Positions 44,634 through 62,654 of a stretch of 64,000 bases of DNA are shown here, piece after piece. Source of the stretch: Macrostomum lignano (taxonomy: Eukaryota); the NCBI GenBank assembly GCA_002269645.1, contig NIVC01000751.1, positions 192,249 to 256,248 on the forward strand, read 5' to 3'. The position numbers and the translations under genes were made by a program. The notes under the pieces were generated by a model. The model saw only the letters and a list, made by a program, of their open reading frames with translations, had not been told where the DNA came from and did not search any database. Each line of letters starts with the position of its first letter. Position 1 is the stretch's first letter.

Positions 44634-44688
<55 letters not shown>

Positions 44689-44774
44689 GCTAACTAACTA
44701 ACTAACTAGCTAACTAACTAACTAACTAACAAACAAACAAACAAACAAACTAACTGACTAACTAACTAACTGAT

Positions 44775-44840
<66 letters not shown>

Positions 44841-44888
44841 GCTAACTAACAAACTAACAAACAAACAAACAAACAAACTAACTAACTG

Positions 44889-44935
<47 letters not shown>

Positions 44936-44988
44936 GATTAACTAACTAACTAACTAACTAACTAACTGACTGACTAACTAACTAACTG

Positions 44989-45023
<35 letters not shown>

Positions 45024-45071
45024 GACTAACTAACTAACTGACTAACTAACTGACTAACTAACTAACTGACT

Positions 45072-45124
<53 letters not shown>

Positions 45125-45144
45125 GACTGACTAACTAACTGACT

Positions 45145-45189
<45 letters not shown>

Positions 45190-45233
45190 GACTGACTGAC
45201 TAACTAACTGACTAACTAACTAACTAACTGACT

Positions 45234-45270
<37 letters not shown>

Positions 45271-45318
45271 GACTGACTGACTAACTAACTAACTAACTAA
45301 CTAACTGACTAAACTAAA

Positions 45319-45359
<41 letters not shown>

Positions 45360-45491
45360 GACTGACTAACTAACTGACTAACTAACTAACTAACTGACTA
45401 ACTAACTAACTGACTAACTAACTAACTAACTAACAAACTAACTAACTAACTGACTGACTGACTAACTAACTAACTAACTAACTAACTGACT

Positions 45492-45532
<41 letters not shown>

Positions 45533-45647
45533 GACTAACTAACTAACTAACTAACTAACTAGCTAACTAACTAACTAACTAGCTAACTAACTAACTAACT
45601 AACAAACAAACAAACAAACTAACTAACTGACTAACTAACTAACTGAT

Positions 45648-45696
<49 letters not shown>

Positions 45697-45699
45697 GAT

Positions 45700-45772
<73 letters not shown>

Positions 45773-45845
45773 GACTGACTAACTAACTAACTAACTAACT
45801 GATTAACTAACTAACTAACTAACTAGCTAACTAACTGACTGACTG

Positions 45846-45888
<43 letters not shown>

Positions 45889-45980
45889 GACTGACTAACT
45901 AACTAACTGACTAACTAACTAACTAACTAACTGACTAACTAACTAACTGACTAACTAACTGACTAACTAACTAACTGACT

Positions 45981-46045
<65 letters not shown>

Positions 46046-46169
46046 GACTAACTAACTGACTAACTAACTAACTAACTGACTGACTAACTAACTGACTAAC
46101 TAACTAACTAACTAACAAACTAACTAACTAACTGACTGACTGACTAACTAACTAACTAACTAACTGACT

Positions 46170-46210
<41 letters not shown>

Positions 46211-46318
46211 GACTAACTAACTAACTAACTAACTAACTAGCTAACTAACTAACTAACTAGCTAACTAACTAACTAACTAACAAACTAACTAACTAACTGA
46301 CTAACTGACTAACTGACT

Positions 46319-46367
<49 letters not shown>

Positions 46368-46482
46368 GACTAACTAACTAACTAACTAACTAACTAGCTA
46401 ACTAACTAACTAACTAGCTAACTAACTAACTAACTAACAAACAAACAAACAAACTAACTAACTGACTAACTAACTAACTGAT

Positions 46483-46539
<57 letters not shown>

Positions 46540-46542
46540 GAT

Positions 46543-46603
<61 letters not shown>

Positions 46604-46672
46604 GACTGACTAACTAACTAACTAACTAACTGATTAACTAACTAACTAACTAACTAGCTAACTAACTGACTG

Positions 46673-46703
<31 letters not shown>

Positions 46704-46724
46704 GACTGACTAACTAACTAACTG

Positions 46725-46763
<39 letters not shown>

Positions 46764-46811
46764 GACTAACTAACTAACTGACTAACTAACTGACTAACTA
46801 ACTAACTGACT

Positions 46812-46864
<53 letters not shown>

Positions 46865-46912
46865 GACTGACTAACTAACTGACTAACTAACTAACTAACT
46901 GACTAAACTAAT

Positions 46913-46957
<45 letters not shown>

Positions 46958-46978
46958 GACTGACTGACTAACTAACTG

Positions 46979-47013
<35 letters not shown>

Positions 47014-47058
47014 GACTGACTAACTAACTGACTAACTAACTAACTAACTAACTGACTG

Positions 47059-47093
<35 letters not shown>

Positions 47094-47097
47094 GACT

Positions 47098-47174
<77 letters not shown>

Positions 47175-47194
47175 GACTAAACTAACTAACTAAA

Positions 47195-47243
<49 letters not shown>

Positions 47244-50200
47244 GACTAACTAACTAACTAACTGACTGACTAACTAACTGACTAACTAACTAACTAACTG
47301 ACTGACTAACTAACTGACTAACTCACTAACTAAAGCTGTCAGCTCCCTAAACGAAATAAAATCAATACAGATCTACCAACCGTTAAAGTCTGTCTCCAAC
47401 GTTGGCGGCGGTAGAGGCGCAGGCACGTGAGGCGGATTAACATACAACGGACAGTTGAGAAAGAAGGCGGCCATGAAGCGAGCCATGGACTGCACAGGAG
47501 TGGACCTGCGCCGCTGCAGCAGACTCAAACTTGGCTGACCCTCCGCAATACTTGACGACGAGAAGAATGGTTGCAGAAACAGAAACCGTTGCTGCTGCTG
47601 CTGCTGAAAGGAGCTGTTGGCAGTGTCCGAATCCTCTGAGCCCAAACCGGCCACGTGGTGCACAAGATCTAAGGCGTAGCGAAAATCACCTCTGAGCATT
47701 GAGACGTAGAGTAGAGAGTGGAGTAGCTGAGCAGCTGGCTTAGAGTGCAGCTTGCAGTCTGAAAAACATTGGAGAGTGTACTCGTGTAAATCAGTAATCT
47801 GTTTGCTTTTTTGGATGGGTACAGAATTTTGATCCAGCCTCTTCAACAGGTACATCTAATCTCTGTTCTCCTGACCTTTGGTCTGTGTTCTCCTGATCTT
47901 TGGTATCTGTTCTCCTGACCTTTGGTCTGTGCTCTCCTGACCTTTGGTCTGTGTTCTCCTGACCTTTGGTATCTGTTCTCCTGACCTTTGGTCTGTGCTC
48001 TCCTGACCTTTGGTCTGTGTTCTCCTGACCTTTGGTCTGTGTTCTCCTGACCTTTGGATTGTGTTCTCCTGACCTTTGGTCGGTGTTCTCCTGACCTTTG
48101 GTATCTGTTCTCCTGACCTTTGGTCTGTGCTCTCCTGACCTTTGGTCTGTGTTCTCCTGACCTTTGGTCTGTGTTCTCCTGACCTTTGGATTGTGTTCTC
48201 CTGACCTTTGGTCGGTGTTCTCCTGACCTTTGGTATCTGTTCTCCTGACCTTTGGTCTGTGCTCTCCTGACCTTTGGTCTGTGTTCTCCTGACCTTTGGT
48301 CTGTGTTCTCCTGACCTTTGGATTGTGTTCTCCTGACCTTTGGTCGGTGTTCTCCTGACCTTTGGTATCTGTTCTCCTGACCTTTGGCCTGTGCTCTCCT
48401 GACCTTTGGCCTGTGTTCTCCTGACCTTTGGTCTGTGTTCTCCTGACCTTTGGTCTGTGTTCTCCTGACCTTTGGTCTGTGTTCTCCTGACCTTTTGGTC
48501 TGTGCTCTCCTGACCTTTGGTCTGTGTTCTCCTGACCTTTGGCCTGTGTTCTCCTGACCTATGGCCTGTGTTCTCCTGACCTTTGGTCTGTGTTCTCCTG
48601 ACCTTTGGTCGGTGTTCTCCTGACCTTTGGTATCTGTTCTCCTGACCTTTGGCCTGTGCTCTCCTGACCTTTGGCCTGTGTTCTCCTGACCTTTGGTCTG
48701 TGTTCTCCTGACCTTTGATCTGTGTTCTCCTGACCTTTGGTCTGTGTTCTCCTGACCTTTGGTCTGTGTTCTCCTGACCTTTGGTCTGTGTTCTCCTGAC
48801 CTTTGGATTGTGTTCTCCTGACCTTTGGCCTGTGTTCTCCTGACCTTTGGATTGTGTTCTCCTGACCTTTGGATTGTGTTCTCCTGACCTTTGGTCTGTG
48901 TTCTCCTGACCTTTGGTCTGTGTTCTCCTGACCTTTGGATTGTGTTCTACTGACCTTTGGTCGGTGTTCTCCTGACCTTTGGTCTGTGTTCTCCTGACCT
49001 TTGGTCTGTGTTCTCCTGATCTTTGGTCTGTGTTCTCCTGACCTTTGGTCTGTGTTCTCCTGACCTTTGGCCTGTGCTCTCCTGGCCTTTGGCCTGTGTT
49101 TTCCTGACCTTTGGTCTGTGTTCTCCTGACCTTTGGTCTGTGTTCTCCTGACCTTTGGTCTGTGTTCTCCCTGACCTCAGTCTCTATCCTCCATGACCTC
49201 AGTCTCTATCCTCCGTGACCTCAGTCTCTATCCTTCATGACCTCAGTCTCTATCCTCCATGACTTCAGTCTCTATCCTCTATAACCTCAGTCTATATCCT
49301 ACAAGCCTCAAACCTCACCCTAAAACCGGCACGCTAGCATCATCAAACTACCAAAACTCACTTCTCGTTGCCAGTTCAGTCAGCTGCCGACGCCACTCCA
49401 CCATGGCTTCCTCGTCGCGCCCCTCAAGCAGATGCCGCTCCCCTCGGCCAATGATTTGTCCTTCGTGCTCAGGCAGATAGGAACAGCTGGCCTGTATAGC
49501 GGCCTGTATTGAGCACAAACTACTCTCAACGTCTTCATCAATCAGGCCTGTAGATTGATAGATTTTAGAGAAAAACTCGTGCAAAGTCAATCGACTAGCT
49601 AGCAGCATCTCGTCGGCTGAGCCAATCGCATTGGAAGCAGCGCTGGGGCCGCCGCCTAGCTGACGGCACAGCCTGGCTGGCAGCCAAGTGTTGGCAGCTG
49701 GCAGGTCGTGAAACGACCGAACTGGCGGCTTGGACCAGGCGTAGGTTTCAGCCAGAGACTGGGCCGCTCTTTGGACAAAGCTGAACGCTACAGCGCCGCC
49801 GTGCAGCACTGGAATGTAGTCTCGCAGGTGTTGGCTAGCAACCAGGTAAGAGGTGAACTCGGCATAGAATTTAGTCAACGGCTGGCACAGACTGAAAGTG
49901 CTCGAGTCAAATTGAGCAATTTCTAGCACAGTACCAGTCAGACTGTGCAGCTGTTCGAGCACGAATGCTAGGAAATCTTCCTGCGACAGTTCGTCCGCTT
50001 CCTCCAATGTCAGCACTAAATTGCTGGCCATGTGAAAGAAGCCCTCGAGTACCAATTCAGCCAGACGCTGCTTGTGCCGCACCGGTTTACCCCGCTCCGT
50101 GACTAACAGTCCCCAGGCTGACGTCAAGTAGAAAAGCGCCTCGCGAAAGTACGTTCCAGGATCGGTTTCGTCGCCGAATAAACTGTGCAAACCGCTGTCG

Positions 50201-52475: not shown

Positions 52476-55085
52476 CAAGGAGAAAGAGAGTAAAAGACCA
52501 GAGCTGCAGGGGAAGCCTGAAGGGCCAGATGGCCAACTGTAAAAGAATGAAAGGCGGGCAGCTCAAGCAGCTAACCGAAGCGTGTTAACGGGATGCACAG
52601 GCAGAAACATAGCCGGGCCGAGCTCCAGACAGCCTTTGCAGGTGAGAGTCAGTGGCGAGCCCATCCTAGCGCAGGCGAATGCAAAGCCCAAACCGGTGCA
52701 GCCGACCAAAAACAGGCCGCGACAGTCCCAGGCCAGGTCTCGAACCCAGGTTGCTGGGGCGCCTCGACTTCCAGCTTGGCCGCCGCCACCTCCTCCCAGG
52801 ACATCCTGGTCGGATAGGCCGATGTCACGCAGGAGTTGAACGTAGCGACTGCTGCCGGTGCCGCTGGCGGCGCTGCCCGACCCGGCGCCGCCTCCGGGCC
52901 CGCCGGTGCCGTTGCCGCCGGCTCGATTCCGTCCTCCGTAATCGACAACGCCCAGGCCCATCAAGGACGAGTGCGTGGCGCAGCCAAGCAGCACGTCAAC
53001 GTAGACAAGGCAGGCGGCTTCGGCTGAGCGCTGGTTGACGCACACAGCTAGGAGAGGCTGATTCGGGCAGAATCGAACCAGCAGAGAGCCGCGGACGTGT
53101 TCCACGGCGGCTTTGGAGCCGAATAGATCGGCAGGATAGCCGGTGCTAATCCAGCTTGAAATGAGCTCGCCAGGTGTGCTGCCACCGCCGGAGCGGCCAA
53201 CAATCCATCGGGATAGATTTGTGGCTACTAATAGGCGGCCCTCGTGATAGAAGCAGTAGCTAACTAGTACGCACGGGCCGAGGTACTGCGAATGTTGCGT
53301 GGGAAAGACATTACTGTTGACGGATTTTAAAACAGTTGAAACACCCACCTCGCTCCGCGACACCCCATTCCTGCCGACTAATAAAAACAGTTAAACACCC
53401 ACCTCACTCTGCGACACCCCATTCCTGCCGACTAATAAAAAACAGCTAAAACACTCACCTCATTCCGCGACACCCCATTCCTGCCGACTAATATTGTAAA
53501 AACAGTTAAAACACCCACCTCACCTCACTCCGCGACACCCCATTCCTGCCGACTAATAAAAACAGTTAAACCTCCTTACACCGCGACACCCCATTCCTGC
53601 CGACTAATAAAAACAGTTAAAACACCCTCCTAGCTCCGCGACACCCCATTCCAGCCGACTAATAAAACAGTTACTAAACATCCAACAAACTGCGACAGAC
53701 AAAAATAGCCTCACCTTGTCAACAAAGTATCCAACATCAACGCAGACTTCGCAGTTCTCATCAGGATCTGGCACGGGAGTGTCATAATCCCAGCGCAATT
53801 TGAACCAGCGACCACTTGGCTGGGATGAAGCATCGTTGCAGCTTCTTTCCCACAGGTAAATATCGGTAACTTCTAGTATCAGAACAATCACGCTGATGTC
53901 TTTGGCAACAAACAGTACCGGCGGGTTGCGTTTTGACAAATCTGCATTTTTTGTGTTATGTAATGTAATTGCATTGATATAAAAGGATTGAGTAGAGAAC
54001 CAGGTAGACAATCTAGCTGGTTTTATCTTGACAATCAATGAACGCTCAGATACATTGATATTGATGTTTTACAAGCGTATCTAATGTACATAGAAAAAAT
54101 GCACAATGGATAAATAGAGTTGAAAATACACTAATTATATGTCTGGCATTTTATTCATACTCTACTTGTAGTAAAAAATTGAATATTACACGTATAAAAT
54201 TGTTAGTAATGAAATATTATTCAATACCCTATTGATTGTAGAAATATAGACAAAATACGATAAATATTAACAAGTAAAAATTTATTTACTACTCTGCCTG
54301 TAGTAGCGACATTAGCATTTAATTTAGTGACGATTTTCAACAGTTAAAATTCGGGTTAAATTTTAAACAGAACGCCAATGCCAAAGACATTCAGCAACTC
54401 AGTGAACTCACTCTCTAAGGAGTTGTAGTGCGACGAGTCTAATGGTCCGGGAACGACATGGACAGCGTTTGAATCGCGACGATAAATCACTATTTGACCA
54501 TTGCTGCAGAAAGAGGCCAGATATTCGCCTGTTGATAGGATTACAGGTGGACAAAGAGATTTTTACACATAATCTTTTAAGAACATTTCAAACTAGTATT
54601 GTAAAATATCAAAATCCACAAGGATTGAATAGTGTGCATGCTTGTCAATAAGAAAGTACATTGCTTCTGTACACTCTGTGTGAGCATGTACCTGTGCATC
54701 CTCCACTGAGTAATACAGACCAAAAATGACAATTTATGAACAGACTTTGTGCTAGAATACAAATAAGAACTCACTCACCCTGAGCAAAGGTGCTCAATGC
54801 AAGATTTTCACTTTTATAGAAAGCAGCAAAGTTCTTCTTTTTCTTCTTGGTTTTGCCAGTTGGCAAGGTCAGAGTGGCAATTTCATCCTTGTTCAGACAG
54901 AATAGACCTTCCTTTTCCTGTTGAGACCAAGATTTTGGCAAGTAATATCAAATAAATAACTCTAAAATTGTTAAAACCATATCTTCATCAACAATAACCA
55001 TTACCTTGCCAAGCCATTGCAGGTTGGCACAAAGGGACTTCTTCTTTACTGGACAAGAAGAGACTGCATCCAGATAGAGTTCCAT
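22382..55085 (-). CDS. CPLANE1: Ciliogenesis and planar polarity effector 1 (C5orf42/JBTS17) orthologue, 23 coding exons, about 3224 aa
   Basis: N-terminus MELYLDAVSSCPVKKKSLCANLQWLGK|EKEGLFCL matches the CPLANE1 start (..WLGKEKE). Also GSLLVRF..LAVCVNQ, WVRDLAWD, LELGPAMFLPVHP, AHPRHPLFAMTDGY, GLLDEAIHVTGQLSDWK, LAWLVRW, and a C-terminal Joubert-type helix QLRQWMEQRRKEQLGQY. All 22 introns are GT-AG with matching phases, and the CDS sums to 9675 nt. Confidence 0.9.
23698..23900 (-). CDS. CPLANE1: CPLANE1 exon 22
   Basis: TTTTTCAG|CC (phase 1, matches the exon 21 donor across a 7.57-kb intron); donor CAG|GTGAGC. Confidence 0.8.
24664..24672 (+). promoter_or_regulatory. TATA-like box upstream of the hydroxylase gene
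   Basis: TATTTAAAA about 90 nt before the ATG at 24761. Confidence 0.4.
24761..26338 (+). CDS. Fatty acid hydroxylase/sterol desaturase superfamily protein (cholesterol 25-hydroxylase-like); exons 24761-25553 and 26160-26338, about 323 aa
   Basis: Histidine boxes WHAVHH, HSTHH, EAHSG, HDMHH plus hydrophobic segments. Donor CCCG|GTGAGT and acceptor GCGCAG|GA are both phase 1. AATAAA at 26510. Confidence 0.9.
25608..26100. repeat. 22-nt minisatellite (AATGTCCTTAGAAAGGAGCTGA)n in the hydroxylase intron
   Basis: Tandem units visible. Confidence 0.95.
26898..30347 (+). CDS. Intronless TRP cation channel: about 6 N-terminal ankyrin repeats + TRPM-like MHR4, 6TM and TRP-box (ORF open from 26820)
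   Basis: Ankyrin motifs (GQLPIHYA, HTPLHRAC, GRTALHIAV). TRPM-type motifs: PIWSILTGK..AVPVCLMAAGLL, LNCLHLAA..F....CQKAMDVAW, FYQIPAVKF, WNIFD, FGPKLKMIYKMIIKDL, FGEY, LWQFERFFFIASY...LPPPLN. Confidence 0.88.
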   Translation: MRQRQLVDWFNNMESTTFRELFPVHELTEEISGFFGYIKTRLPRHSLFAAQQQLNVPSGANDKAALAALQAKERKEAELLLRMQRAAEEKDMAALSGLFSPANVDRPVKDAMRLSDLAAALGSTPMLQLVLDHGGQINAKNAAGQLPIHYALTSPEVPATVAYLLERGADPNIPMPNGDFLMHKACSDSATTLLDLLLNHQADPGCLDSQRHTPLHRACINDLREHAEIVLDAAPDLINQQDAFGRTALHIAVENQNIQLMKMLLEQGATIDRETENGMTAIDSMMVTKNRGALKELIVYFTEKVSKDVRAYKMTDLYRSKHFRQFLNVLKLIDSEACKCYYRAREEDLEQKRETELKLVNDLLDVDEENTQDVMDFQSKMMAALKTGAIHDCTDNREIIDTIAIFTTKYILFREDVSMLQDVMHCGVIWRHVSQFLEEHIATLYSKTNKDASIISKLFAEQFIDYSAGGKRAALRRTALVKKVGDVLGMYQLSRVNVAHCLEVTNPIDTLPIWSILTGKMNLTLEFLSQVQFEAVPVCLMAAGLLRNLHKVLNVDTLELPSIAVLADQCEIFACKVVERMCMVDVSEHKKTTYQYLLQILPAFDNLNCLHLAANCGCDTFLRLDTCQKAMDVAWYRFLLDVNPIYREIIIALGCIPLNPLVSIALYRDYRRLAHAEQERRLSLDAVQSADQTEGSGSGGGGGGGGGSSRNRRTSFMIEDDDTRDATSTMFSDALEFQPPDPRLHGGTMAAKVSECCTLYYYFYQIPAVKFRYFTISHLVLLCTLSYVVQFQLNASITALEVFVYITAFGFVVEEAKKFVQSIWRQKLLDYVRNKWNIFDFVTSLIFLTGFVLRLVVLEYEPYSLDQTMLGLFDNRLWYCTRAFLGTYCLLLWVKLLNTSRVHQYFGPKLKMIYKMIIKDLLPFLFILIIFLLGFGILMCSLLYPNGYYAYNPNRMSLISMAKRLVQFCFFSVFGEYHLDTVNGENCEEVYTARTNNTLPCPNPQSTFIVPYILLPLYVTITTILLLSLIVALFSKTIEEIDCNSTALWQFERFFFIASYASNSSLPPPLNVLDMGRELLLKVCHRYLEQPQKPIEMDFFNQDVALKALIYQAIGMRNYRSELLITCANTKEAKAATIGVKRSASLFHH
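30566..31443. repeat. 16-nt minisatellite (GAGAAGCATCAGGGAT)n
   Basis: About 55 units ending about 25 nt from the exon 21 donor. Confidence 0.97.
31468..32324 (-). CDS. CPLANE1: CPLANE1 exon 21 (Joubert-domain helix)
   Basis: CTCTCTCAG|T phase 2; RTPEERAQLRQWMEQRRKEQLGQY; donor CAGG|GTAAGT. Confidence 0.88.
32410..33935. repeat. 20-nt minisatellite (GATGCTAGTTACTCTCTCTG)n
   Basis: About 75 units. Confidence 0.97.
33974..34066 (-). CDS. CPLANE1: CPLANE1 exon 20
   Basis: ACTTTCAG|C ... GC|GTAAGT, phase 2/2, open frame. Confidence 0.75.
34160..34371 (-). CDS. CPLANE1: CPLANE1 exon 19
   Basis: CTTCCAG|CTT ... CG|GTGAGA, phase 0/2. Confidence 0.78.
34430..35115. repeat. About 54-60-nt minisatellite (CATAAACCCTGGATCAGCCAGTCAAATCAGC...CACCCACCACCCCATT)
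   Basis: About 12 diverged units; related to 35915-36385. Confidence 0.9.
35156..35694 (-). CDS. CPLANE1: CPLANE1 exon 18
   Basis: GCGCAG|CT ... AGG|GTCAGC, phase 1/0; LQDMEKRLRLIADMSDRFDSDY. Confidence 0.8.
35790..35865 (-). CDS. CPLANE1: CPLANE1 exon 17
   Basis: TCTTCTAG|GAG ... C|GTAAGT, phase 0/1. Confidence 0.75.
35915..36385. repeat. 54-nt minisatellite (GGATCAGCCAGTCCAATCAGCGAGGAACACCCACCACCCCATTTAGCACAGGCCATAAAATT-type)
   Basis: About 8 homogeneous units. Confidence 0.92.
36518..37696 (-). CDS. CPLANE1: CPLANE1 exon 16
   Basis: CCCTCCAG|TTC ... TTG|GTAAAT, phase 0/0, within ORF 36476-37753. Confidence 0.8.
37733..38495. repeat. 22-23-nt minisatellite (GCTGGATGAAGGGATCGGGTCATGACCTA)n
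   Basis: Fills nearly the whole of intron 15. Confidence 0.96.
38531..38801 (-). CDS. CPLANE1: CPLANE1 exon 15
   Basis: TCTCTGCAG|G ... AAG|GTGAGG, phase 2/0. Confidence 0.8.
39461..39876 (-). CDS. CPLANE1: CPLANE1 exon 14
   Basis: ATCCCAG|CAT ... GT|GTAAGT, phase 0/2. Confidence 0.78.
39883..40020. repeat. (GACA)n microsatellite filling intron 13
   Basis: Directly visible. Confidence 0.97.
40029..40703 (-). CDS. CPLANE1: CPLANE1 exon 13
   Basis: CCTTCAG|ACG ... CAC|GTAAGT, phase 0/0; IADRLAWLVRW. Confidence 0.8.
40830..41075. repeat. 15-nt minisatellite (CTCTGGAAGCAGACA)n in intron 12
   Basis: Tandem units visible. Confidence 0.92.
41112..41721 (-). CDS. CPLANE1: CPLANE1 exon 12
   Basis: ACTCGCAG|A ... 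TTT|GTGAGT, phase 2/0. Confidence 0.82.
41797..42125 (+). mobile_element. tRNA-derived SINE
   Basis: A-box GAGCTCAGTGG (41800) and B-box GGCTCGATTCC (41845) at tRNA spacing; unique body; 3' hairpin CCAGGG/CCCTGG and A-rich tail. Confidence 0.6.
42111..42141 (+). other. Orphan histone stem-loop-like motif
   Basis: AATGAA..TAAAAACGGCCCTTTTAGGGC; matches the H2B 3' end including the upstream AATGAA. Confidence 0.65.
42461..42484 (+). other. Orphan histone stem-loop-like motif
   Basis: AAAACGGCCCTTTTAAGGGCACAC: 5-bp stem GCCCT/AGGGC, 4-nt loop TTTA; lacks only the basal C. Confidence 0.72.
42632..42829. mobile_element. hAT-type MITE (198 bp)
   Basis: TIRs TAGGGATTCCAA...TTGGAATCCCTA; 8-bp flanking repeats TTACGGAC/TTACGGAG (7/8); internal ATCCCGGGAT palindromes. 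Confidence 0.8.
42887..43655 (-). CDS. CPLANE1: CPLANE1 exon 11
   Basis: ATTTCAG|TT ... AG|GTAATA, phase 1/2. Confidence 0.85.
43683..43724 (+). other. Orphan, stem-degenerate histone 3'-end homologue inside the 102-nt intron 10
   Basis: GAACAGTTAAAACGGCCCTTTTACGGACAACATATGAAATTG versus H2B GAACGCTAAAACGGCCCTTTTCAGGGCCACCACATTCAAATTG. Confidence 0.6.
43758..43855 (-). CDS. CPLANE1: CPLANE1 exon 10
   Basis: ATTGCAG|C ... G|GTAAGC, phase 2/1. Confidence 0.8.
44117..44345 (-). CDS. CPLANE1: CPLANE1 exon 9
   Basis: AACGCAG|AC ... TG|GTATGT, phase 1/2; WTAEKCVELHLVSGLLDEA..LSDWK. Confidence 0.87.
44390..47332. repeat. About 2.9-kb (CTAA)n microsatellite with CTGA/CAAA/CTAG variants
   Basis: Directly visible; fills intron 8. 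Confidence 0.98.
47381..47758 (-). CDS. CPLANE1: CPLANE1 exon 8
   Basis: GTTTTTCAG|AC ... G|GTTGGT, phase 1/1. Confidence 0.78.
47865..49290. repeat. 21-nt minisatellite (CTCCTGACCTTTGGTCTGTGT)n followed by (GACCTCAGTCTCTATCCTCCAT)n
   Basis: Fills intron 7. Confidence 0.97.
49362..50294 (-). CDS. CPLANE1: CPLANE1 exon 7
   Basis: TTTTTCAG|CC ... A|GTGAGT, phase 1/1. Confidence 0.87.
50440..50978. repeat. 20-nt minisatellite (GAGGATGTGACACTTCAAT)n
   Basis: Tandem units in intron 6. Confidence 0.96.
51020..51786 (-). CDS. CPLANE1: CPLANE1 exon 6
   Basis: CCCCAACGCCGCAG|C ... CAG|GTGAGA, phase 2/1; QRYSVSAHPRHPLFAMTDGYSVSLLRF. Confidence 0.87.
51862..52472. repeat. Purine-rich higher-order repeat (about 130-170-nt blocks) plus (GA)n
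   Basis: The block GATACAGAGAGACTAGAGAGAGATAGAAGAAGGGTCTGAGATCC... recurs three times. Confidence 0.85.
52576..53285 (-). CDS. CPLANE1: CPLANE1 exon 5
   Basis: TTCGCAG|TAC ... CG|GTTAGC, phase 0/2; beta-propeller-like motifs. Confidence 0.9.
53335..53670. repeat. About 50-nt minisatellite (GCGACACCCCATTCCTGCCGACTAATAAAAACAGTTAAAACACCCACCTCACTCC)
   Basis: Six units filling intron 4. Confidence 0.92.
53715..53941 (-). CDS. CPLANE1: CPLANE1 exon 4
   Basis: AAATGCAG|AT ... AAG|GTGAGG, phase 1/0; IYLWE..SGRW. Confidence 0.82.
54412..54528 (-). CDS. CPLANE1: CPLANE1 exon 3
   Basis: TCAACAG|GC ... A|GTGAGT, phase 1/1; EYLASFCSNGQIVIY. Confidence 0.8.
54779..54917 (-). CDS. CPLANE1: CPLANE1 exon 2
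   Basis: TCAACAG|GAA ... G|GTGAGT, phase 0/1; EKEGLFCL. Confidence 0.82.
55005..55085 (-). CDS. CPLANE1: CPLANE1 exon 1 (start codon)
   Basis: ATG GAA CTC...TGG CTT GGC AAG|GTAATG. Confidence 0.82.
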
Positions 55086-56709
55086 AGGACTCCACTGGAA
55101 ACTGCTATTGTCATACCATGCACATTTTTCAGGAGACCAAAAGATTAAGAAATGACTAAGGTTCAGTGACTTATATTTTTTATAAACAAAGTAAAAATAT
55201 AAGAAAAATATAAATATAGATAAATAGCAATTTGAAATTAAAGCAAAAGATGTAAAAATTCTAAATTAATGATTAAGGTTATGTTTAGTGACATCATCTC
55301 ATAGTCTTGTTATCAAATGTTTAACAGAAATGGCATAGTGCTTTTGTTGGCATTTTATTATACATTTTAGTCTAAAGAAAATCTTAATTTTTGTGATAGA
55401 TTGATAGGCAATTAAAAGAAATATATTATTTAATAATAAGCAAGATTCATGTATAAAACTTTAAGATTTTTAAGTTATTACTATTACTATTATAATTATA
55501 TCTGACTCATTATAGGAGTGGTCAAAGACCAATGGCAAAAGCACCAATGGTTGTCCCATGGTTATGGAGAGAAAAAAGGCAAAGGAATTGAAATAAAACA
55601 AAGGGAAAAGGTGGAAAGAAAACAAGACAAAGAAAAAAGAAGCCTAAAAAGATCAAGGTAGGCCTAGTCTTTGAGATATCTGGCTCTTAAAAATGGATGG
55701 CCTAATACCCCTGGCTGGATGGCCTAATACCCCTGGCTAGATGGCCTAATAGGCCTAGCTAATGCTATAAGTAGAGAATCTATAATTTAGAGTAAGTGGG
55801 AATAAAGCATCACTTCTGTTGCTCTGTTCTAGGAAAAGGAAACCTAAGGAGAAGCTGTGCTAATTGTTGTTAGAATAGATACCATAGTGCAACTATAGAG
55901 CAGCAAAGGGAGGGAGGAGCTACTAAAGTTTACTAGGGCCTTGACTTCTAGAAATCTAAGGACAAAAGCAAGTTTACTAGGGGCCTAAGAGTTCTATGAA
56001 TCTTAAGGCTACATGTATATTGAACCTTGAAGGAGTCATTATGATCCTGATAGCCTTTTGCTCAATATGGTCGAATAAAATAATTTGGGACTCATAGGGA
56101 GATCTTCCATCTATATATAATGGTACAATATACAGGGAATGATATTAAAAAGAAACAGGTAGAAAATCACAAAAATCCTTTTGTTACTAATGATTATATG
56201 CTCCTATTCATTATGGCTTAGGATTAAACTTTATATTTCAATCTAAACCCCATTTGTTAACTTTTTAAGATCTATGGTATGCCTAATTGGAAATTCTTAG
56301 GATGCAACATTTATTCTAGATGCAAAAGGGATAATGGATAGCTAGTAGCTAGTAGGATAGGTTGTAATTTCAAGAAGGTCATTGATAAATTATTAAAAAG
56401 TAAGAATAGGGTAGGTCTAAGATAACCATGATATCCTAGTACACATTTGATTCTTCAAATTTCTTTCAAAATATATTTTTTATTTTAGGACAAAATACTA
56501 CACTACAGTGACCAGACAATTCCATAGTCTTGTAATGAACATGGACTCACTAACTAACTAGACAGGACATGTCCAGATAGCATAATCACTGCCTAGTAAA
56601 TTGGTAAAATAAACAACATGTTAGGCCTATATGATAGTGAATATGTATACTACTAGTAACCTATAATAGAAAATAAATTGTGTCTTTGAGTATATAAAAA
56701 TTGGCTAGT

Positions 56710-56887
56710 CAGTGGCGTAGCCAGGATTTTCTTCTGGGGGGGGTCACAGTCAGTCACAGGCTCACAGCAGCAACTGGGGGCAGGGGTGCTAGGCCTCTGC
56801 GATGGGGGAGGGGGCCTGAAAATTTGGCCTGGATTAGGCCCTAGCCGGCTGGGGGGTCATGGGGGGGGGCCCTTGGCTACGCCCCTG
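56710..56887. mobile_element. hAT-like MITE
   Basis: TIR CAGTGGCGTAGCC / GGCTACGCCCCTG (12/13); G-run-rich interior; TSD not recognisable. Confidence 0.6.
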
Positions 56888-57020
56888 AAAATAGTCCCAC
56901 CAATATTCGCTTGGACAAAGCTAATACAATTATAACATAACAACTAGGCATAGGGGTTGCATAGAGACTGCAACTTCTAGATAAAATTTCCAATTTATGT
57001 AGTACATATTAATAATATGC

Positions 57021-57223
57021 CAGTGGTGCAACCAGGGGGGACCCTAGGGGCCCTTCCCCTCCTTAGGCAGAAACCAGAAAAAAATCAAGGGGGTTGCAGG
57101 CGAATTTTCACCAAATTACAGAGCCGAGCCACCCTCTCCGGTCTCTGCCTTCCGCCTTTGGGTCTTTACTCTTTACCCTCCAGAATCCGCCCCCCTCCAA
57201 AAAAAATTTATGGTGGCGCTACT
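57021..57223. mobile_element. Degenerate MITE
   Basis: AGTGGTGCAACCA versus the reverse complement of TGGTGGCGCTACT (10/13); GC-rich interior in AT-rich context. Confidence 0.45.
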
Positions 57224-58479
57224 TTAAATAAAAAAGCAAATAAAAATACATATTTTGATCATAATTATCTAATGAGTTGAGTTGGTCCAATAAAAATAAA
57301 AGTATGCGCATCAGGTTACGGTATAATAATACGTCCTATTGTAAATTAAATTGCAAAGAAGAAGCGAAAAATAGCGTCAAAAAAACATTTAAAGCTTCTA
57401 GTCAGTAACTAAAAAAATATTTTAGGTCTTCACTGTTAGCCATCTACAGTAAATCTACTTTTATTTTTTAAATGCTCTAATATTTGATGAAAAGGTTAAA
57501 ACTTTGCAGGTTCGGGTCGTTCATTTTTAACTGTCATAATTTCACCACATCACCTGGGGGTACATTAATTTTTTTGCTCATTCAAAAACGAACCTATTGA
57601 GTTTCTGTAATTCACTGTAAGCCAAGCCATGGACAGTATATTGTAATATAGCATAATCGAAGACCAAAGTTTTATTGGTTTCATTTAAGTTTTAATGAGA
57701 ATAATTCATAGTAAAATATAGCCTAGGCCTACTGTACCTGTTTATTGGGCCTTAGATTCTTAGAATCATTTTTCACTTAATTTGTATTTAATGACTATTT
57801 TTTTAAATCAAGTCCAATTTTAGTGGTGGTAAGTTGCTTGGTTCAACTTGAATTCAAAATAATTTTGAGCAAGTTAAGCCACTTTTGTAGGCTAACATTT
57901 TAGTCTATTTGCTCTTCTAGTTCTAGATCTAGATAAAAATAGAAAATAATTATCTATGGCTAGGCCTACCGCCTACTTGCTACCATACTATGTCCATACA
58001 CTTCAGCAACAAGACATTTTAAAAATGGACATTTTAACAAAAAAATTTGGACAAATGATTTTTTGTCAACAATAGACCTTATGGCTTATTCTCACACACA
58101 TTGGCAATAAAAGAGAAAGAAATTTCAACAAAAAGCCTTCAATATGAATATAATAATTAATAAATAGCTATAGACATAGGCCTAAGTCTTAATTTGACAA
58201 TTGATTTTGATTGATATTAGGGCCTAATTAGTAGCAAGTAGGCCTATATTTGTTTTTCATTTACTTAAAACTTGAAAGTAAGACATACTACAGGCCTAGG
58301 CCTAGTCTATAAATATAAAATACTAAAATAAAATGAAACAGGCCTAATCATTCTATTTAAGTAAGTTTAGTTGGCAATTTCCTAGTTTACTGCGTCAAAC
58401 TATTTTTGGGTAGAAAATGAAAAGTTACATATTTCAATAGTTGGCAGTAATTTGAGAGCAGTCCAAAGTGTCAATAATA

Positions 58480-59330
58480 ATGCACAACCTAATATAGGAA
58501 GTTCCAAATTCTTTCTTCAAGAAGAGGTGGCGCCATAGGTACTCATTGAAGTCTAGGTGGATCTTAAACAGGGCGTCGCTGGTGCGTGCATTGCCCTGAA
58601 TTTGGCCTTGACGTGTGCCCATGACCCCTTAATGGTGTTTGTATGAATAGTTGGGTTGTGGGAGTCCACAAAGTGGAGTCAGTGATTGAGAGCCACATGA
58701 TTCTGCAAGCTGTTGTAAGCCTGCTATCCATCAGTCAGTATCTTTATGCCAGGAAATATATGCTACTAGATAATGGGCAGAAGTGTTTGAGCAGTGCAGT
58801 TTGGAACAAGCATCATCATGGCTTTGTTGGTGCCATATTCCACCATTCTGAGAACCCAATGACCTTCATGATAACCTTGCTGGTATTTGCGGCAGAAAAA
58901 CTTTTATTTATCTACCTCTACCTTATTAACAGGGCCACCAAGTTCCATGGGATGGTTGAACAAGTATTGGCAGCATATGTTGCAACAGAAATTGGCCTAG
59001 TCCATGGCAGTCTAGCGGGCAATGTGACATTAGCATTCAATCTAATACATAGGTAGGCTGCATACACAAAGGTAGATGAAATCTAGCAGCTAGGTGACAA
59101 TAAGATGGCTGCCCTTAAAGAAGCTACCCTTTGTAATCGCTTCCTATGTCTTGTAGATAGGGCATGACCAGGCATAGCCATTGATAAACTAGAGTCTATC
59201 TTGCCGTTATAGTTGCATGGCCAGAGCATCTAGGCATTGTTTGCAAGCCTAGGAGTTAAGAAGCAGCTCGTAAGTGGCCAGCCAGTACATAGTTGCCATG
59301 CCATCCAATATGAGCAGCACCAGCTCATGC
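58480..59330 (-). pseudogene. Decayed Merlin (IS1016/IS1595-ISXO2-like DDE) transposase
   Basis: Minus-strand translation: ITKGSFFKGSHL..LLDFIYL; D*ANFCCNICC; LGGPVNKVEVDK*KFFCRKY..G..EGHWV; LVPNCTAQTLLPII**HIFPG.KILTDG*QAYNSL; LNH*LHFVD..IHTNTIKGSWAHVK; then a frameshift to EYLWR. Multiple in-frame stops. Confidence 0.85.
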
Positions 59331-60639
59331 AGTATTAAATCAATGTTGCAAAGCTCAGCTGCAGGCCTCAAATTGGCCTCAGGTACAATTGTAATTAATG
59401 CTATAGGCCTCCTGGCCATATGGGCAGTTAGTAGGTAGGCTGAAAAGTTTTGAAAGTGGGCAAATAATTTAATGCAGTAAACTAGAAGATTATGGTTTAG
59501 TCATTATTATAATTATAAAAATATTGAATTATGATAATTATTTTAAAAAGCATTGAGCAAATTGCAGAAGTCTAGTAGTTGCAAAGCTGTTTTGTTTCCT
59601 TGATAGTATTACTTCCATAGCTTCTAGAGTTTGCCTTGTCTTTGAAGCTAATATATTTGCTGACATTGCTAAATTGCTCTATGTATTATATTAGGAGTCT
59701 CACATTATATATGCGCAACCTTTGGAATCACCTAGCCATTTCTATTAGCAACGTATATATGTAAGTTGCTATTGGCTAAGAGCAGTCATGTGACTGCTAT
59801 TTGAACCAAGTGACTTATATGTGTTGCCAATAGAAATGGCCAGGTGAATTCCTAGGTTACATTAGCATCTCACATTGATATATTGATAGTCATTAGGCAA
59901 CTTTCTAAAAAAATGATATATACCAAGAGATAGAACTAGAATCTAGTATATTATGCTTGCTGATTAATTAATTTGCTAGTGCTGGCTTTAATAGTTATTT
60001 TATATATATGGCATGCCTATAGGCACTAAGCTCATTGACAATTGTCAATCTATATTAAACTTGATAACCAGATATTCTAGTGATTAATTGGATATAAATA
60101 GATATGAAATTGTAATCTAGCTTATTTAATATTTTTACTGATTGTTACTACATTATTTATATATATATATTATATACTTGACAGAAACTAGATCCATAGT
60201 CATCTAGTAAGTATATATATTAAAATAAACACAATTCCTATAGCAATAGCTCATTATAATTAGTGATAGAGGATCTCAATAGTTGAAAAACATTGTGAAT
60301 TTTCTCACTAGGCCTAGGTAGGCTTAAAATGGCAATGCCATTAGCTTATAACAAAAATGCTAAGTTCTTTTATCATTTTTGTACAATTCCTAAAAGCCTT
60401 ATAATTGATTTTTTGCCAAATTTCTTGTATAAAGTGAAATATGCAGCCATGGATGATTGCATCTGGAAAAAAACAGCCTTGATTGATAGCTTGCTAGATT
60501 ATTGTTTGAAAAGTTTTTTAACATTTTAAGAATTGAGCCCCATTTAACTAGAGCAATATTTAGAATAGACTCTTGCCTAATTGCCATTATATATATATAT
60601 ATTATAAGCTTCATATATACTAAAAATGAAATGTCTGTA

Positions 60640-60980
60640 ACTATCTAGCTATGCGATAGATTTCAGAAAAAGTGGCTCAACCGATTTTCTTCAAACTTGC
60701 ACCATTTGATCAGAAATTTTCCTGGGACGGTACATGCATCTTGGCTAAGAAATTGCTCAATTTTAAAGGGATTAAATATTCGAAAAACATGCTTTTTTGC
60801 AAAGGTCAAGCAGCTCTTTCGACCTGAAATGAATTGTAAAAATGCGAAAGAAAAAACTGACTGACTGAATTTCAATTGTGATAAAGATTGCATCACAACA
60901 AGATGAAAACAGTGTCGAAAAAATGCACACAAGACTTGATTGTAATTGCGTAACCATATTGCTAACTTGAATTGAGACTG
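60640..60980. mobile_element. Possible non-autonomous Helitron/Helentron-derived fragment
   Basis: Motif GGCTCAACCGATTTTCTTCAAACTTGCAC, typical of such elements and shared with 62655-63300. Confidence 0.3.
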
Positions 60981-61194: not shown

Positions 61195-62640
61195 AAACAT
61201 AAAAGAAGCGCAATGTCAAATATAAAAGAGCCACCATGCCAAACAAAAAAAGTGCCCCATGTAGAACACAGAAGAGACACCATGTCAAACATAAAAGAGC
61301 CACCATTTCAAACATAAAAGAGCCACCATGTGAAACATATACGTGACTCAATGTCAAACATTAAAGAGCCACCATGTCAAACATTAAAGAGCCACCATGT
61401 CGAACATAACAGAGACAACATTTCAAACATAAAAGAGCCATCATGTCAAACATAAAAGAGCCACCATGTCGAACATTAAAGAGCCACTATGTCAAACATA
61501 ACAGAGACAACATTTCAAACATAAAAGAGCCATCATGTCAAACATTAAAGAGCCACCATGTCGAACATTAAAGAGCCACCATGTTGAACATTGAAGAGCC
61601 ACCATGTCAAACATTAAAGAGCCACCAAGTAAAATATAAAAGAGCTACCATGTCAAAACATAAAAGAGCCACCATGTCGAACATAACAGAGACAACATTT
61701 CAAACATTTAAGAGCACCATGTCAAACATAAAAGAGCCACCATGTCGAGCATAAAAGAGCCACCATGTCAAACATAAAAGAGCCACCATGTCAAACATTA
61801 AAGAGCCACCATGTCAAACATTCAGAGAAACCATGTCGAACATAACAGAGACAACATTTCAAACATTTAAGAGCCACCATGTCAAACATAAAAGAGCCAC
61901 CATGTCGAGCATAAAATAGCCACCATGTTGAACATTAAAGAGCCACCATGTCAAACATTAAAGAGCCACCATGTCGGCATAAAAGAGCCACCATGTCGAA
62001 CATAAAAGAGCCACCATGTCAAACATTAAAGAGCCACCATGTCAAACATTCAAGAGACACCATGTCGAACATAAACAGAGACAACATTTCAAACATTTAA
62101 GAGCCACCATGTCAAACATAAAAGATCTACCATGTCAAACATAAAAGAGCCATCATGTCAAACATAAAAGAGCCACCATGTCGAACATTAAAGAGCCACC
62201 ATGTTCAACATTAAGGAGCCACCATGTCAAACATAAAAGAGCCACCATGTCAAACATTAAAGAGCCACCATGTCAAACATTAAAGAGCCACCATGTCAAA
62301 CATTCAAGATCAGCCATGTCGAACAATAAAAGAGCCACCATGTAAAATATAAAAGAGCTACCATGTCAAACATAAAAGAGCCATCATGTCAAACATAAAA
62401 GAGCCATCATGTGAAACATATACGTGACTCAATGTCAAACATTAAAGAGCCACCATGTCAAACATATACGTGACTCCATGTCAAACATATATGACTCCAT
62501 GTCAAACATATATGACTCCATGTCAAACATATATGACTCCATGTCAAACATATATGACTCCATGTCAAACATTAAAAATAAAAAAGACACCATGTCACAC
62601 ATAAGGGAGCCACCATATCAAACATAAAAGAGCTACCATG
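61195..62640. repeat. About 20-22-nt minisatellite (AAAGAGCCACCATGTCAAACAT)n
   Basis: About 65 units with variants. Confidence 0.96.
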
Positions 62641-62654
62641 TCAAAACATTATTG

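What the first reader, a model, noticed from the sequence alone, without database searches (positions are those of the whole stretch)
54529..56715. Sharply bounded CpG void over the first two coding exons and 5' flank of CPLANE1
By manual scan this 2.19-kb stretch has one CpG (about 56072), where tens would be expected from its base composition. Exon 3, immediately adjacent, has about 9 CpGs in 117 nt, and all downstream exons are CpG-rich. Exons 1-2 (220 nt) have none and use AT-rich codons. A second depleted block spans about 57660-60650 (roughly 14 CpGs in 3 kb). This is the inverse of a CpG island and unlike gene-body-wide methylation. Inference: a germline methylation or deamination domain restricted to the 5' end or promoter flanks, strong enough to rewrite coding exons.
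Basis: partly seen in the sequence, partly recalled or inferred. Interest (0 to 1): 0.7.

Follow-up and report, generated by a model that had tools for sequence, protein, structure and literature searches.

The report
CpG-free block over a flatworm gene start
A 2.2-kb stretch covering the first two exons of the cilia gene CPLANE1 in the flatworm Macrostomum lignano has lost almost every CpG; it is the edge of a 6-kb CpG-poor block that holds a dead transposon, and past or present DNA methylation is the likeliest but unproven cause.

Summary
Window 54529-56715 has 1 CpG where 58.7 are expected (P about 1e-24), and it is complex sequence, not a tandem repeat. Base composition does not explain it, because equally AT-rich neighbours have normal CpG. 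A mis-join is excluded: exons 1-2 encode the conserved CPLANE1 N-terminus and align collinearly with orthologues across the void edge.

The organism is Macrostomum lignano, which per the literature keeps DNMT1 and DNMT3 and has low 5mC.

- The void is not confined to the gene's 5' end. It is the left edge of a roughly 6.1-kb CpG-poor block (54529-60650).
- That block is broken by a 0.95-kb CpG-bearing insert and contains a decayed ISXO2-like transposase.
- A TpG/CpA surplus, the deamination footprint, appears in the 612-bp gene part (o/e 1.43) and in the transposase remnant. It is absent from the upstream 1.6 kb (0.98).
- Exons 1-2 have 0 Arg and 13 Lys, against 180 Arg and 44 Lys in the rest of the gene.
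- Other genes in the window have no 5' void.

Best model, at moderate confidence: long-term CpG methylation of a transposon-bearing intergenic block that reaches into the gene as far as intron 2. Methylome data would decide it.

The parts
54529..56715 (.). CpG void as reported: 1 CpG (at 56072) in 2187 bp of complex sequence
   Evidence: 1 observed against 58.7 expected; edge support 54530-54615 and 56560-56800
55005..55085 (-). CPLANE1 coding exon 1 (ATG at 55085; MELYLDAVSSCPVKKKSLCANLQWLGK); 0 CpG. A possible splice or trans-splice acceptor AG lies at 55096-55095 after a pyrimidine tract (unverified).
   Evidence: identical in M. lignano model P0001; aligns to residues 1-27 of ~3000-aa orthologues
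54918..55004 (-). intron 1 (GT..AG), 0 CpG
54779..54917 (-). CPLANE1 exon 2, 0 CpG, no Arg codon
   Evidence: (P0002 residues 142-189, 100% identity)
54529..54778 (-). intron 2 (GT..AG), 0 CpG against 7.4 expected; the left edge of the void lies in its last ~85 bp or at the exon 3 acceptor
54412..54528 (-). CPLANE1 exon 3, the first CpG-normal segment (9 CpG against 6.6 expected)
   Evidence: spliced to exon 2 in P0002
53715..53941 (-). CPLANE1 exon 4 (11 CpG against 12.6 expected); with intron 3 (53942-54411, 8 against 9.8) it serves as the local AT-rich, CpG-normal control
55141..56715 (.). Upstream non-coding part of the void: GC 0.31, 1 CpG against 37.3 expected, TG+CA o/e 0.98. Includes a 22-bp x3 repeat at 55694-55759. 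From ~55650 it is enriched in GGCCTA/TAGGCC and CTAG.
56716..57660 (.). CpG-bearing interruption (20 CpG against 40.9 expected). Contains two G-rich palindromic MITE-like elements (56709-56888 with TIR CAGTGGCGTAGCCAGG; ~57021-57222) and an AT-rich CpG-normal stretch, 57231-57660 (o/e 0.95).
57661..60650 (.). Second CpG-poor block (14 CpG against 86.4 expected, o/e 0.16); the non-transposon parts have o/e 0.06-0.11
58376..59491 (-). Decayed ISXO2-like (IS1595-type DDE) transposon remnant. The transposase pseudogene lies at ~58500-59060 with several stops and a frameshift. Putative 24-nt inverted ends at 58376-58399 and 59468-59491. CpG o/e 0.25, TG+CA o/e 1.42-1.47.
   Evidence: (PF12762, E = 7e-14)
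55650..60650 (.). Stretch with a distinct oligonucleotide signature: 27 of the window's 39 GGCCTA/TAGGCC sites, CTAG enriched about 5-fold, GpC o/e up to 1.84. The signature and the CpG depletion both end at ~60650.

Best explanation
The void is the left edge of a roughly 6.1-kb block (54529-60650) upstream of and overlapping the start of the Macrostomum lignano CPLANE1 gene. I propose that this block has been CpG-methylated in the germline for a long time. It is AT-rich intergenic DNA that carries transposon debris.

In this model, methylated CpGs were lost by deamination to TpG/CpA. The oldest non-coding DNA is now essentially CpG-free, with the footprint erased by later mutation. Later insertions (the ISXO2-like transposon and the MITE-like elements) are only partly depleted. 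The methylated state reaches about 1.1 kb into the gene, through exon 1, intron 1, exon 2 and intron 2, and stops before exon 3.

In the two exons the decay removed every CpG, including all CGN arginine codons, and lysine has taken over the basic positions.

Shown here: the depletion, its extent, its CpG specificity, the gene structure, the transposon remnant, the TpG/CpA surplus in the gene part, and the Arg loss.

Inferred: that methylation is the cause, that it acts or acted in the germline, and that it is nucleated by the transposon-bearing DNA.
For: - CpG-specific loss with normal GpC.
- Equally AT-rich neighbours are CpG-normal.
- The rest of the gene and the other genes in the window have o/e ~0.9-1.1.
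- Depletion is graded inside the block. Background non-coding DNA has o/e 0.03-0.11, the transposase remnant 0.25, and the MITE-bearing interruption 0.49. This fits a process acting in place over time.
- TG+CA o/e is 1.43 in the 612-bp gene part: 103 observed against 71.8 expected, a surplus about equal to the 21 missing CpGs. It is 1.42-1.47 over the transposase remnant. Only 1.4% of comparable windows elsewhere reach 1.43.
- Exons 1-2 have 0 Arg and 13 Lys, against 6 and 4 in exons 3-4 (P = 0.002) and 180 and 44 in the rest of the gene, where most Arg codons (140 of 180) are CGN. Orthologues have 4-6 Arg in the same 73 residues.
- M. lignano keeps DNMT1 and DNMT3 and has low-level 5mC (PMC11292947, PMC9246332, PMC10658182).
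Against: - No methylation measurement was available.
- The upstream 1.6 kb of the void has no TpG/CpA surplus (0.98).
- The few windows elsewhere that reach TG+CA 1.43 are CpG-normal coding DNA, so the surplus in the gene part is only suggestive (P = 0.014-0.058).
- An o/e of 0.017 is far below what bulk methylated vertebrate DNA shows (P = 1e-4 against 0.2), so an unusually efficient or long-lasting process is required.
- The 55.65-60.65 kb stretch has its own k-mer signature (GGCCTA, CTAG). This could mean a distinct sequence origin rather than decay in place.
- 57231-57660, inside the block, is CpG-normal and unexplained.
- Only one locus could be examined.
Confidence: 0.5

Rival explanations
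1. One reading: a methylation domain that belongs to the gene itself. This would be methylation of the 5'-proximal gene body or outron of CPLANE1, starting just downstream of a TSS in the CpG-retaining 57.2-57.65 kb stretch and ending at exon 3, as in the 5'-biased gene-body methylation of insects. In this reading the transposon block upstream is depleted independently.
For: The void runs from just left of a CpG-retaining stretch (57231-57660, o/e 0.95) to intron 2. A pyrimidine tract plus AG 9 nt upstream of the ATG could be a trans-splice acceptor. The deamination footprint and the Arg loss lie in the gene part.
Against: The TSS is unknown. CpG depletion resumes upstream of the proposed TSS, from 57661 to 60650. 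The other two genes in the window show no 5' depletion, in the ORF or in the upstream kb (o/e 0.73-0.98). The remaining ~23 kb of the same gene has CpG o/e ~1.
Confidence: 0.17
2. A structural mosaic with no process acting in place now. The CpG-free DNA would be an old sequence layer, a fossil of an earlier methylation regime or DNA of a different origin with its own oligonucleotide signature. The sharp edges would be breakpoints: insertions on the right, and on the left a recombination or gene-conversion tract that refreshed exon 3 onward from a CpG-normal homeologous copy.
For: - There is a distinct GGCCTA/CTAG signature from 55650 to 60650, ending exactly where CpGs return.
- The right edge of the void coincides with the end of a MITE-like element.
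- There is no TpG/CpA surplus in the upstream 1.6 kb.
- Another M. lignano gene model (P0002) has exons 2 onward nearly identical but 141 N-terminal residues not encoded in this window. That hints at a second copy or a different upstream context.
Against: The gene part (54529-55650) lacks the k-mer signature yet is CpG-free, so the void and the signature are not the same unit. Exons 1-2 are orthologous CPLANE1 sequence, not imported DNA. Graded depletion of the inserted elements suggests decay continued after they arrived. No breakpoint is visible at 54529.
Confidence: 0.2
3. An assembly artefact: a mis-join with foreign DNA at about 54530, or systematic consensus errors at modified CpGs.
For: The edge is very sharp, and the depletion is more extreme than known methylated genomes show.
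Against: - The reading frame, GT..AG introns and splice phases are continuous across the edge.
- The orthologue alignment is collinear through the exon 2 / exon 3 junction.
- Two separate M. lignano gene models contain these exons. P0001 is 100% identical over exons 1-2 but was built on a sequence with frame errors that this window lacks. P0002 has exons 2-3-4-5 spliced as modelled here.
Confidence: 0.03
4. A CpG-specific process other than 5mC deamination: a RIP-like defence, an editing deaminase, or selection against CpG in the 5' leader or promoter.
For: Near-total erasure with sharp borders is reminiscent of RIP-type processes.
Against: The void is not duplicated anywhere in the window. 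RIP indices are normal: TpA o/e is 0.94 and CA+TG exceeds AC+GT. No such system is known in animals, and selection cannot plausibly clear 1.6 kb of non-coding DNA.
Confidence: 0.05

Closest known systems
Mosaic invertebrate DNA methylation with CpG depletion of methylated compartments (low CpG o/e classes; transposon-directed methylation in some lineages)
   Same: CpG-specific depletion is confined to a domain in a genome that is otherwise CpG-normal. The species has DNMT1 and DNMT3. A transposon remnant lies inside the domain, and a TpG/CpA surplus is present in the (ex-)coding parts.
   Different: The usual invertebrate target is the body of housekeeping genes, with o/e ~0.3-0.5. Here the gene body is CpG-normal, the depleted part is the intergenic/5' end, and o/e is 0.02. 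Methylation itself was not observed.
5'-biased gene-body methylation of insects (methylation concentrated in the first exons and introns)
   Same: Depletion covers the first two exons and introns and stops within the gene.
   Different: It extends at least 1.6 kb (with block 2, 5.5 kb) upstream of the start codon. It is not seen at the other genes in the window, and the position of the TSS is unknown.
Spreading of transposon methylation or heterochromatin into adjacent genes (plants, mammals)
   Same: A dead transposon and MITE-like elements sit within ~1.6-4 kb of the affected exons. The affected distance into the gene is ~1 kb.
   Different: The flanking DNA is more depleted than the transposon itself, and no small-RNA or chromatin data are available.
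Vertebrate-type global CpG depletion with CpG islands
   Same: The dinucleotide pattern of the block resembles vertebrate bulk DNA (CG low; CC/GG and AG/CT high; AC/GT low). A short CpG-retaining stretch (57231-57660) is embedded in depleted DNA.
   Different: It is a 6-kb island of depletion in a CpG-normal genome, the inverse arrangement. The depletion is about 10-fold deeper than vertebrate bulk DNA.
Repeat-induced point mutation (fungi)
   Same: Sharp borders and near-complete loss of the target dinucleotide.
   Different: No duplicated partner, no TpA excess or CpA loss, and not known in animals.

Membership tests
Methylation-driven CpG-depleted domain | CpG o/e far below local expectation while GpC and base composition are ordinary | tested here: met
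   o/e 0.017, GpC o/e 1.15; AT-rich controls have o/e 0.82-0.95
Methylation-driven CpG-depleted domain | Matching surplus of TpG/CpA (the deamination products) | tested here: inconclusive
   Gene part 1.43 and transposase remnant 1.42-1.47, but upstream 1.6 kb 0.98 and whole void 1.11. Some CpG-normal coding windows also reach 1.4-1.5.
Methylation-driven CpG-depleted domain | The organism has maintenance and de novo CpG methyltransferases | not tested
   Taken from the literature only: DNMT1 and DNMT3 are conserved in M. lignano, with low 5mC (PMC11292947, PMC9246332)
Methylation-driven CpG-depleted domain | 5mC actually present on the domain in the germline | not testable with these tools
   No bisulfite or long-read modification data were reachable. 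M. lignano genomic records could not be fetched.
5'-proximal gene-body methylation | The domain starts downstream of the TSS and lies within the transcription unit | not testable with these tools
   TSS unknown. Depletion also lies upstream of any plausible TSS, at 57661-60650.
5'-proximal gene-body methylation | A recurrent feature of genes in the genome | tested here: not met
   The TRP-channel and fatty-acid-hydroxylase genes in the window have CpG-normal 5' flanks and ORFs (o/e 0.73-0.98). Only two genes could be tested.
RIP-like mutation | The target is a duplicated sequence | tested here: not met
   No copy of the void elsewhere in the 64-kb window. The rest of the genome was not testable.
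RIP-like mutation | TpA excess with CpA/TpG loss | tested here: not met
   TpA o/e 0.94, CA/TG 1.10, AC/GT 0.82
CPLANE1 (C5orf42/JBTS17) orthologue | Conserved N-terminus collinear with long (~3000 aa) orthologues | tested here: met
   phmmer matches query residues 1-60 to residues 1-60 of proteins of 1000-3687 aa, several of them over 3000 aa. The alignment runs through exons 1-4.
CPLANE1 (C5orf42/JBTS17) orthologue | Joubert domain (PF15392) | tested here: inconclusive
   Partial hit in ORF 31430-32281(-), E = 4.6e-5, 23.6 bits, below the 27-bit cut-off
ISXO2-like / IS1595-type DNA transposon | DDE_Tnp_IS1595 transposase domain | tested here: met
   PF12762, E = 7.4e-14, 52.5 bits, on the stop-masked conceptual translation
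ISXO2-like / IS1595-type DNA transposon | Intact ORF and terminal inverted repeats with a target-site duplication | tested here: not met
   Several stops and a frameshift. Only a 24-nt, 83% inverted pair, and no clean duplication. It is a dead remnant.

The most novel reading that the evidence does not exclude
Macrostomum lignano, a free-living flatworm whose methylation landscape is undescribed, may aim its DNMT1/DNMT3 system at transposon-bearing intergenic DNA rather than at gene bodies. The effect would be so persistent that CpGs are erased almost completely (o/e 0.02, about ten times deeper than vertebrate bulk DNA). Where such a block abuts a gene it would rewrite the protein; here every arginine in the conserved N-terminus of a ciliogenesis gene has been replaced. 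CpG voids would then be a sequence-only map of the flatworm's methylated compartment.
Probability: 0.3. Interest if true: 0.55.

Novelty: new member of a known kind. Interest (0 to 1): 0.35.

Why it matters
Reviews state that the genomic pattern of DNA methylation is unknown for any free-living flatworm, even though M. lignano keeps the full methyltransferase set (PMC9246332).

A sharply bounded block with almost no CpG, in an otherwise CpG-normal genome, is a cheap sequence-level pointer to where that machinery has acted. Here it points to transposon-bearing intergenic DNA and a gene's 5' end, not to the gene body.

If the pattern is general, CpG o/e segmentation of the assembly would predict the methylated compartment. 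It would also show that local methylation can change protein composition (Arg to Lys) in a conserved ciliopathy gene.

As a single locus without methylation data, it remains a modest curiosity.

Tried and rejected
- **Composition alone.** Rejected: AT-rich neighbours are CpG-normal.
- **Tandem or low-complexity sequence.** Rejected for this block, but it is the explanation for every other long CpG-free run in the window.
- **Mis-join or foreign DNA.** Rejected by splice continuity, orthologue collinearity and two gene models.
- **Fetching M. lignano paralogous or other genomic loci for a substitution spectrum.** P0001, P0002 and the TRP-channel ORF are not on record.
- **Using the 7.4-kb tandem duplication (8797-16185 / 16190-23568) as an internal mutation spectrum.** The copies are identical outside a GA-repeat, so they give no information.
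- **Using CG/CA/TG variants among units of the 23-bp satellite (61195-62645).** The site is no more variable than the sub-family sites, so it is uninformative.
- **Comparing the transposase remnant with its closest relative (L001) for the fate of CpG sites.** At 67% DNA identity it is too diverged. L001 is CpG-normal and lacks the GGCCTA signature.
- **Long terminal repeats or inverted repeats defining one large element at 55.1-60.7 kb.** None found.
- **Rfam and tRNA scans of the window.** Nothing found.
- **Literature on the M. lignano methylome.** Only secondary statements were available. The primary paper (Wasik et al. 2015) is not held.

Full report
**1. The observation**

Window 54529-56715 (2187 bp, GC 0.329) contains a single CpG, at 56072. 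Base composition predicts 58.7, giving o/e 0.017. The Poisson probability of seeing one or fewer is 2e-24 at o/e 1 and 3e-16 at the window-wide o/e of 0.67. It is still 1e-4 at a vertebrate-like o/e of 0.2.

GpC is normal, at o/e 1.15. The stretch is complex sequence: Tandem Repeats Finder reports only a 22-bp x2.6 array at 55694-55751. Every other CpG-free run of 300 bp or more outside 54.5-60.65 kb is a tandem array, for example (ACTA)n at 44389-47333.

- Exons 1 and 2 together are 220 nt with 0 CpG, against 10.1 expected.
- Exon 3 is 117 nt with 9 CpG.
- Block 57661-60650 has 14 CpG against 86.4 expected.

A change-point likelihood puts the left edge at 54530-54615 and the right edge at 56560-56800.

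Composition alone is not the cause. Intron 3 (GC 0.29) has o/e 0.82, 57231-57660 (GC 0.30) has 0.95, and 14001-15000 (GC 0.35) has 1.22.

**2. Organism and gene**

A word-indexed protein search with the spliced exons 1-4 returned one protein, UniRef A0A1I8I7D4 of Macrostomum lignano (P0001). It is 100% identical over exons 1-2.

The gene lies on the minus strand:

| Feature | Coordinates |
|---|---|
| Exon 1 (ATG at 55085) | 55085-55005 |
| Intron 1 | 55004-54918 |
| Exon 2 | 54917-54779 |
| Intron 2 | 54778-54529 |
| Exon 3 | 54528-54412 |
| Intron 3 | 54411-53942 |
| Exon 4 | 53941-53715 |
| Exon 5 | about 53285-52587 |

All introns are GT..AG with compatible phases.

A full phmmer scan of 1.84 billion representative proteins with P0001 matched residues 1-60 of the query to residues 1-60 of proteins of 1000-3687 aa, several of them over 3000 aa. 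A MAFFT alignment is collinear through exons 1, 2, 3 and 4. It includes the exon 2 / exon 3 junction (STFAQ|G|EYLASF against, for example, SSSPN-G-EFLIGL).

A second M. lignano model, P0002 (1006 aa), contains exons 2-3-4-5 and further exons, spliced as modelled here. A partial Joubert-domain hit lies in a downstream exon at 31430-32281, so the gene spans about 31-55 kb.

Exons 1-2 are therefore genuine CPLANE1 coding sequence, contiguous with exon 3. This refutes a mis-join with foreign DNA.

P0001 carries out-of-frame pieces of exon 5 that this window reads cleanly, so it was predicted on a different, more error-prone sequence. The CpG-free exons are nevertheless identical in it. This argues against a consensus artefact.

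**3. What surrounds the void**

The void is not an isolated feature of the gene's 5' end.

- To the right lies a 945-bp CpG-bearing interruption, 56716-57660 (20 CpG against 40.9 expected).
- It holds two G-rich palindromic MITE-like elements, at 56709-56888 (inverted ends CAGTGGCGTAGCCAGG) and at about 57021-57222.
- It also holds an AT-rich, CpG-normal stretch, 57231-57660.
- Depletion then resumes from 57661 to 60650 (o/e 0.16).

Inside that second block, on the minus strand, is a decayed ISXO2-like (IS1595-type DDE) transposase. It has several stop codons and a frameshift. Pfam PF12762 scores E = 7e-14 on the stop-masked translation. Possible 24-nt inverted ends lie at 58376-58399 and 59468-59491. 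Its closest relatives are 60% identical proteins on metagenome contigs. The one examined (L001) is CpG-normal.

Depletion is graded:

| Segment | CpG o/e |
|---|---|
| Non-transposon background of block 2 | 0.06-0.11 |
| Upstream part of the void | 0.03 |
| Transposase remnant | 0.25 |
| MITE-bearing interruption | 0.49 |

From about 55650 to 60650 the DNA also carries a distinct oligonucleotide signature. It holds 27 of the window's 39 GGCCTA/TAGGCC sites, CTAG is enriched about 5-fold, and GpC o/e reaches 1.84. The signature ends exactly where CpGs return. It is absent from the gene part, 54529-55650. The void and the signature therefore overlap but are not the same unit.

**4. Is there a deamination footprint?**

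Over the whole void TG+CA o/e is 1.11, no higher than the CpG-normal left flank at 1.22. Splitting the void changes the picture.

- The 612-bp gene part (54529-55140; 0 CpG against 21.1 expected) has TG+CA o/e 1.43, with 103 observed against 71.8 expected. The surplus roughly equals the missing CpGs.
- The upstream 1575 bp has 0.98.
- Windows over the transposase remnant reach 1.42-1.47.

Only 1.4% of comparable non-repeat windows outside 54-60.7 kb reach 1.43. Those that do are CpG-normal coding DNA, so this is suggestive rather than decisive (P = 0.014 against the window mean, 0.058 against the local flank).

At protein level, exons 1-2 have 0 Arg and 13 Lys. Exons 3-4 have 6 Arg and 4 Lys (Fisher P = 0.002). 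The rest of the gene has 180 Arg and 44 Lys, and most Arg codons there (140 of 180) are CGN. Two orthologues counted have 4 and 6 Arg in the homologous 73 residues. GC3 in exons 1-2 (0.48) is close to that of exons 3-4 (0.50), so the shift is specific to CpG and Arg rather than a general AT bias.

**5. Context in the window**

All downstream CPLANE1 exons have CpG o/e 0.73-1.12. The TRP-channel gene (26.9-30.3 kb), the fatty-acid hydroxylase ORF (24.7-25.6 kb) and their upstream kilobases have 0.73-0.98. Depletion at the 5' end is therefore not a general gene feature here.

**6. Background knowledge**

According to the papers read, M. lignano retains DNMT1 and DNMT3 and has low global 5mC. The genomic pattern of methylation in free-living flatworms was described as unknown in 2022 (PMC11292947, PMC9246332, PMC10658182). 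The primary genome paper could not be read.

**7. Explanation**

The best-supported reading (confidence about 0.5) is long-term germline CpG methylation of a roughly 6.1-kb AT-rich, transposon-bearing intergenic block. Its left edge extends through CPLANE1 exon 1, intron 1, exon 2 and intron 2.

- Old non-coding DNA has reached near-zero CpG, and later mutation has erased the footprint.
- Younger inserted elements are only partly depleted.
- The constrained exons retain the TpG/CpA products and have lost their CGN arginines.

The cause (5mC) and its timing are inferred, not shown.

Rivals:
It is weakened by the upstream depletion and by the normal 5' ends of the other genes.
- (b) A structural mosaic or fossil layer with no ongoing process, confidence 0.2. 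The k-mer signature and the element-defined right edge support it. The signature-free but CpG-free gene part and the graded depletion weaken it.
- (c) An assembly artefact, confidence 0.03.
- (d) A CpG-specific process that does not involve 5mC, confidence 0.05.

**8. Novelty and score**

CpG depletion of methylated compartments is a known kind of feature. This is a new instance in a lineage whose methylation targets are undescribed. It has two unusual properties: its depth (o/e 0.02) and its position (intergenic DNA plus first exons, with a CpG-normal gene body).

With one locus and no methylation data, interest is moderate at 0.35. The decisive tests are mapping methylome data to 54-61 kb, genome-wide CpG o/e segmentation, and polarised substitutions against the homeologue or sister species.

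Noticed in passing
window 8797-16185 and 16190-23568: A 7.4-kb direct tandem duplication. The two copies have no mismatch outside a GA-rich tandem array (99.0% overall, with all differences inside 13450-13840). It is either a very recent segmental duplication or an assembly artefact.
   Followed up: partly
window 30.5-53.7 kb (e.g. 44389-47333, 47860-49300, 32428-33936, 37731-38493): The introns of the CPLANE1-like gene are packed with long micro- and minisatellite arrays. These include a 2.9-kb (ACTA)n array and 16- to 62-bp units repeated 8 to 75 times, and they account for most of the gene's 24-kb span.
   Followed up: partly
window 56709-56888 and ~57021-57222: Two related G-run-rich palindromic MITE-like elements with ends CAGTGGCGTAGCCAGG / CAGTGGTGCAACCAGG. 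One end differs by a CpG-to-TpG change. The family was not identified.
   Followed up: partly
window 58376-59491 (minus strand): A dead ISXO2-like (IS1595-type DDE) transposon remnant. Its nearest relatives are only 40-60% identical proteins on ENA metagenome contigs, and no M. lignano protein was returned.
   Followed up: yes
window 55650-60650: Strong local enrichment of GGCCTA/TAGGCC, AGGCCT and CTAG (about 20-fold and 5-fold over the rest of the window) with GpC o/e up to 1.84. It is not due to long repeats, and its origin is unexplained.
   Followed up: partly
protein P0002 (M. lignano model), residues 1-141: This second gene model shares exons 2 onward (99-100% identity), but its first 141 residues are GC-rich, low-complexity sequence not encoded anywhere in the window. 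This suggests a chimeric prediction or a second gene copy with a different upstream region.
   Followed up: partly
window 26826-30347 (+) and 24728-25633 (+): An apparently intronless 1149-aa ankyrin-repeat TRP-type cation channel ORF and a fatty-acid hydroxylase-domain ORF lie downstream of the CPLANE1 3' end on the opposite strand. Both are CpG-normal.
   Followed up: partly
window ~53.7 kb: A compositional step separate from the CpG edge. Exons 1-4 and their introns (GC 0.28-0.48, GC3 ~0.5) sit in an AT-rich domain that runs to the end of the window. Exon 5 onward is GC 0.52-0.66 (GC3 0.60-0.76).
   Followed up: partly
window 61195-62645: A 23-bp satellite (about 63 units, AAACATAAAAGAGCCACCATGTC) lies just right of the CpG-poor block. 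Its units carry CG, CA and TG variants at one site, but that site is no more variable than the sub-family sites.
   Followed up: yes
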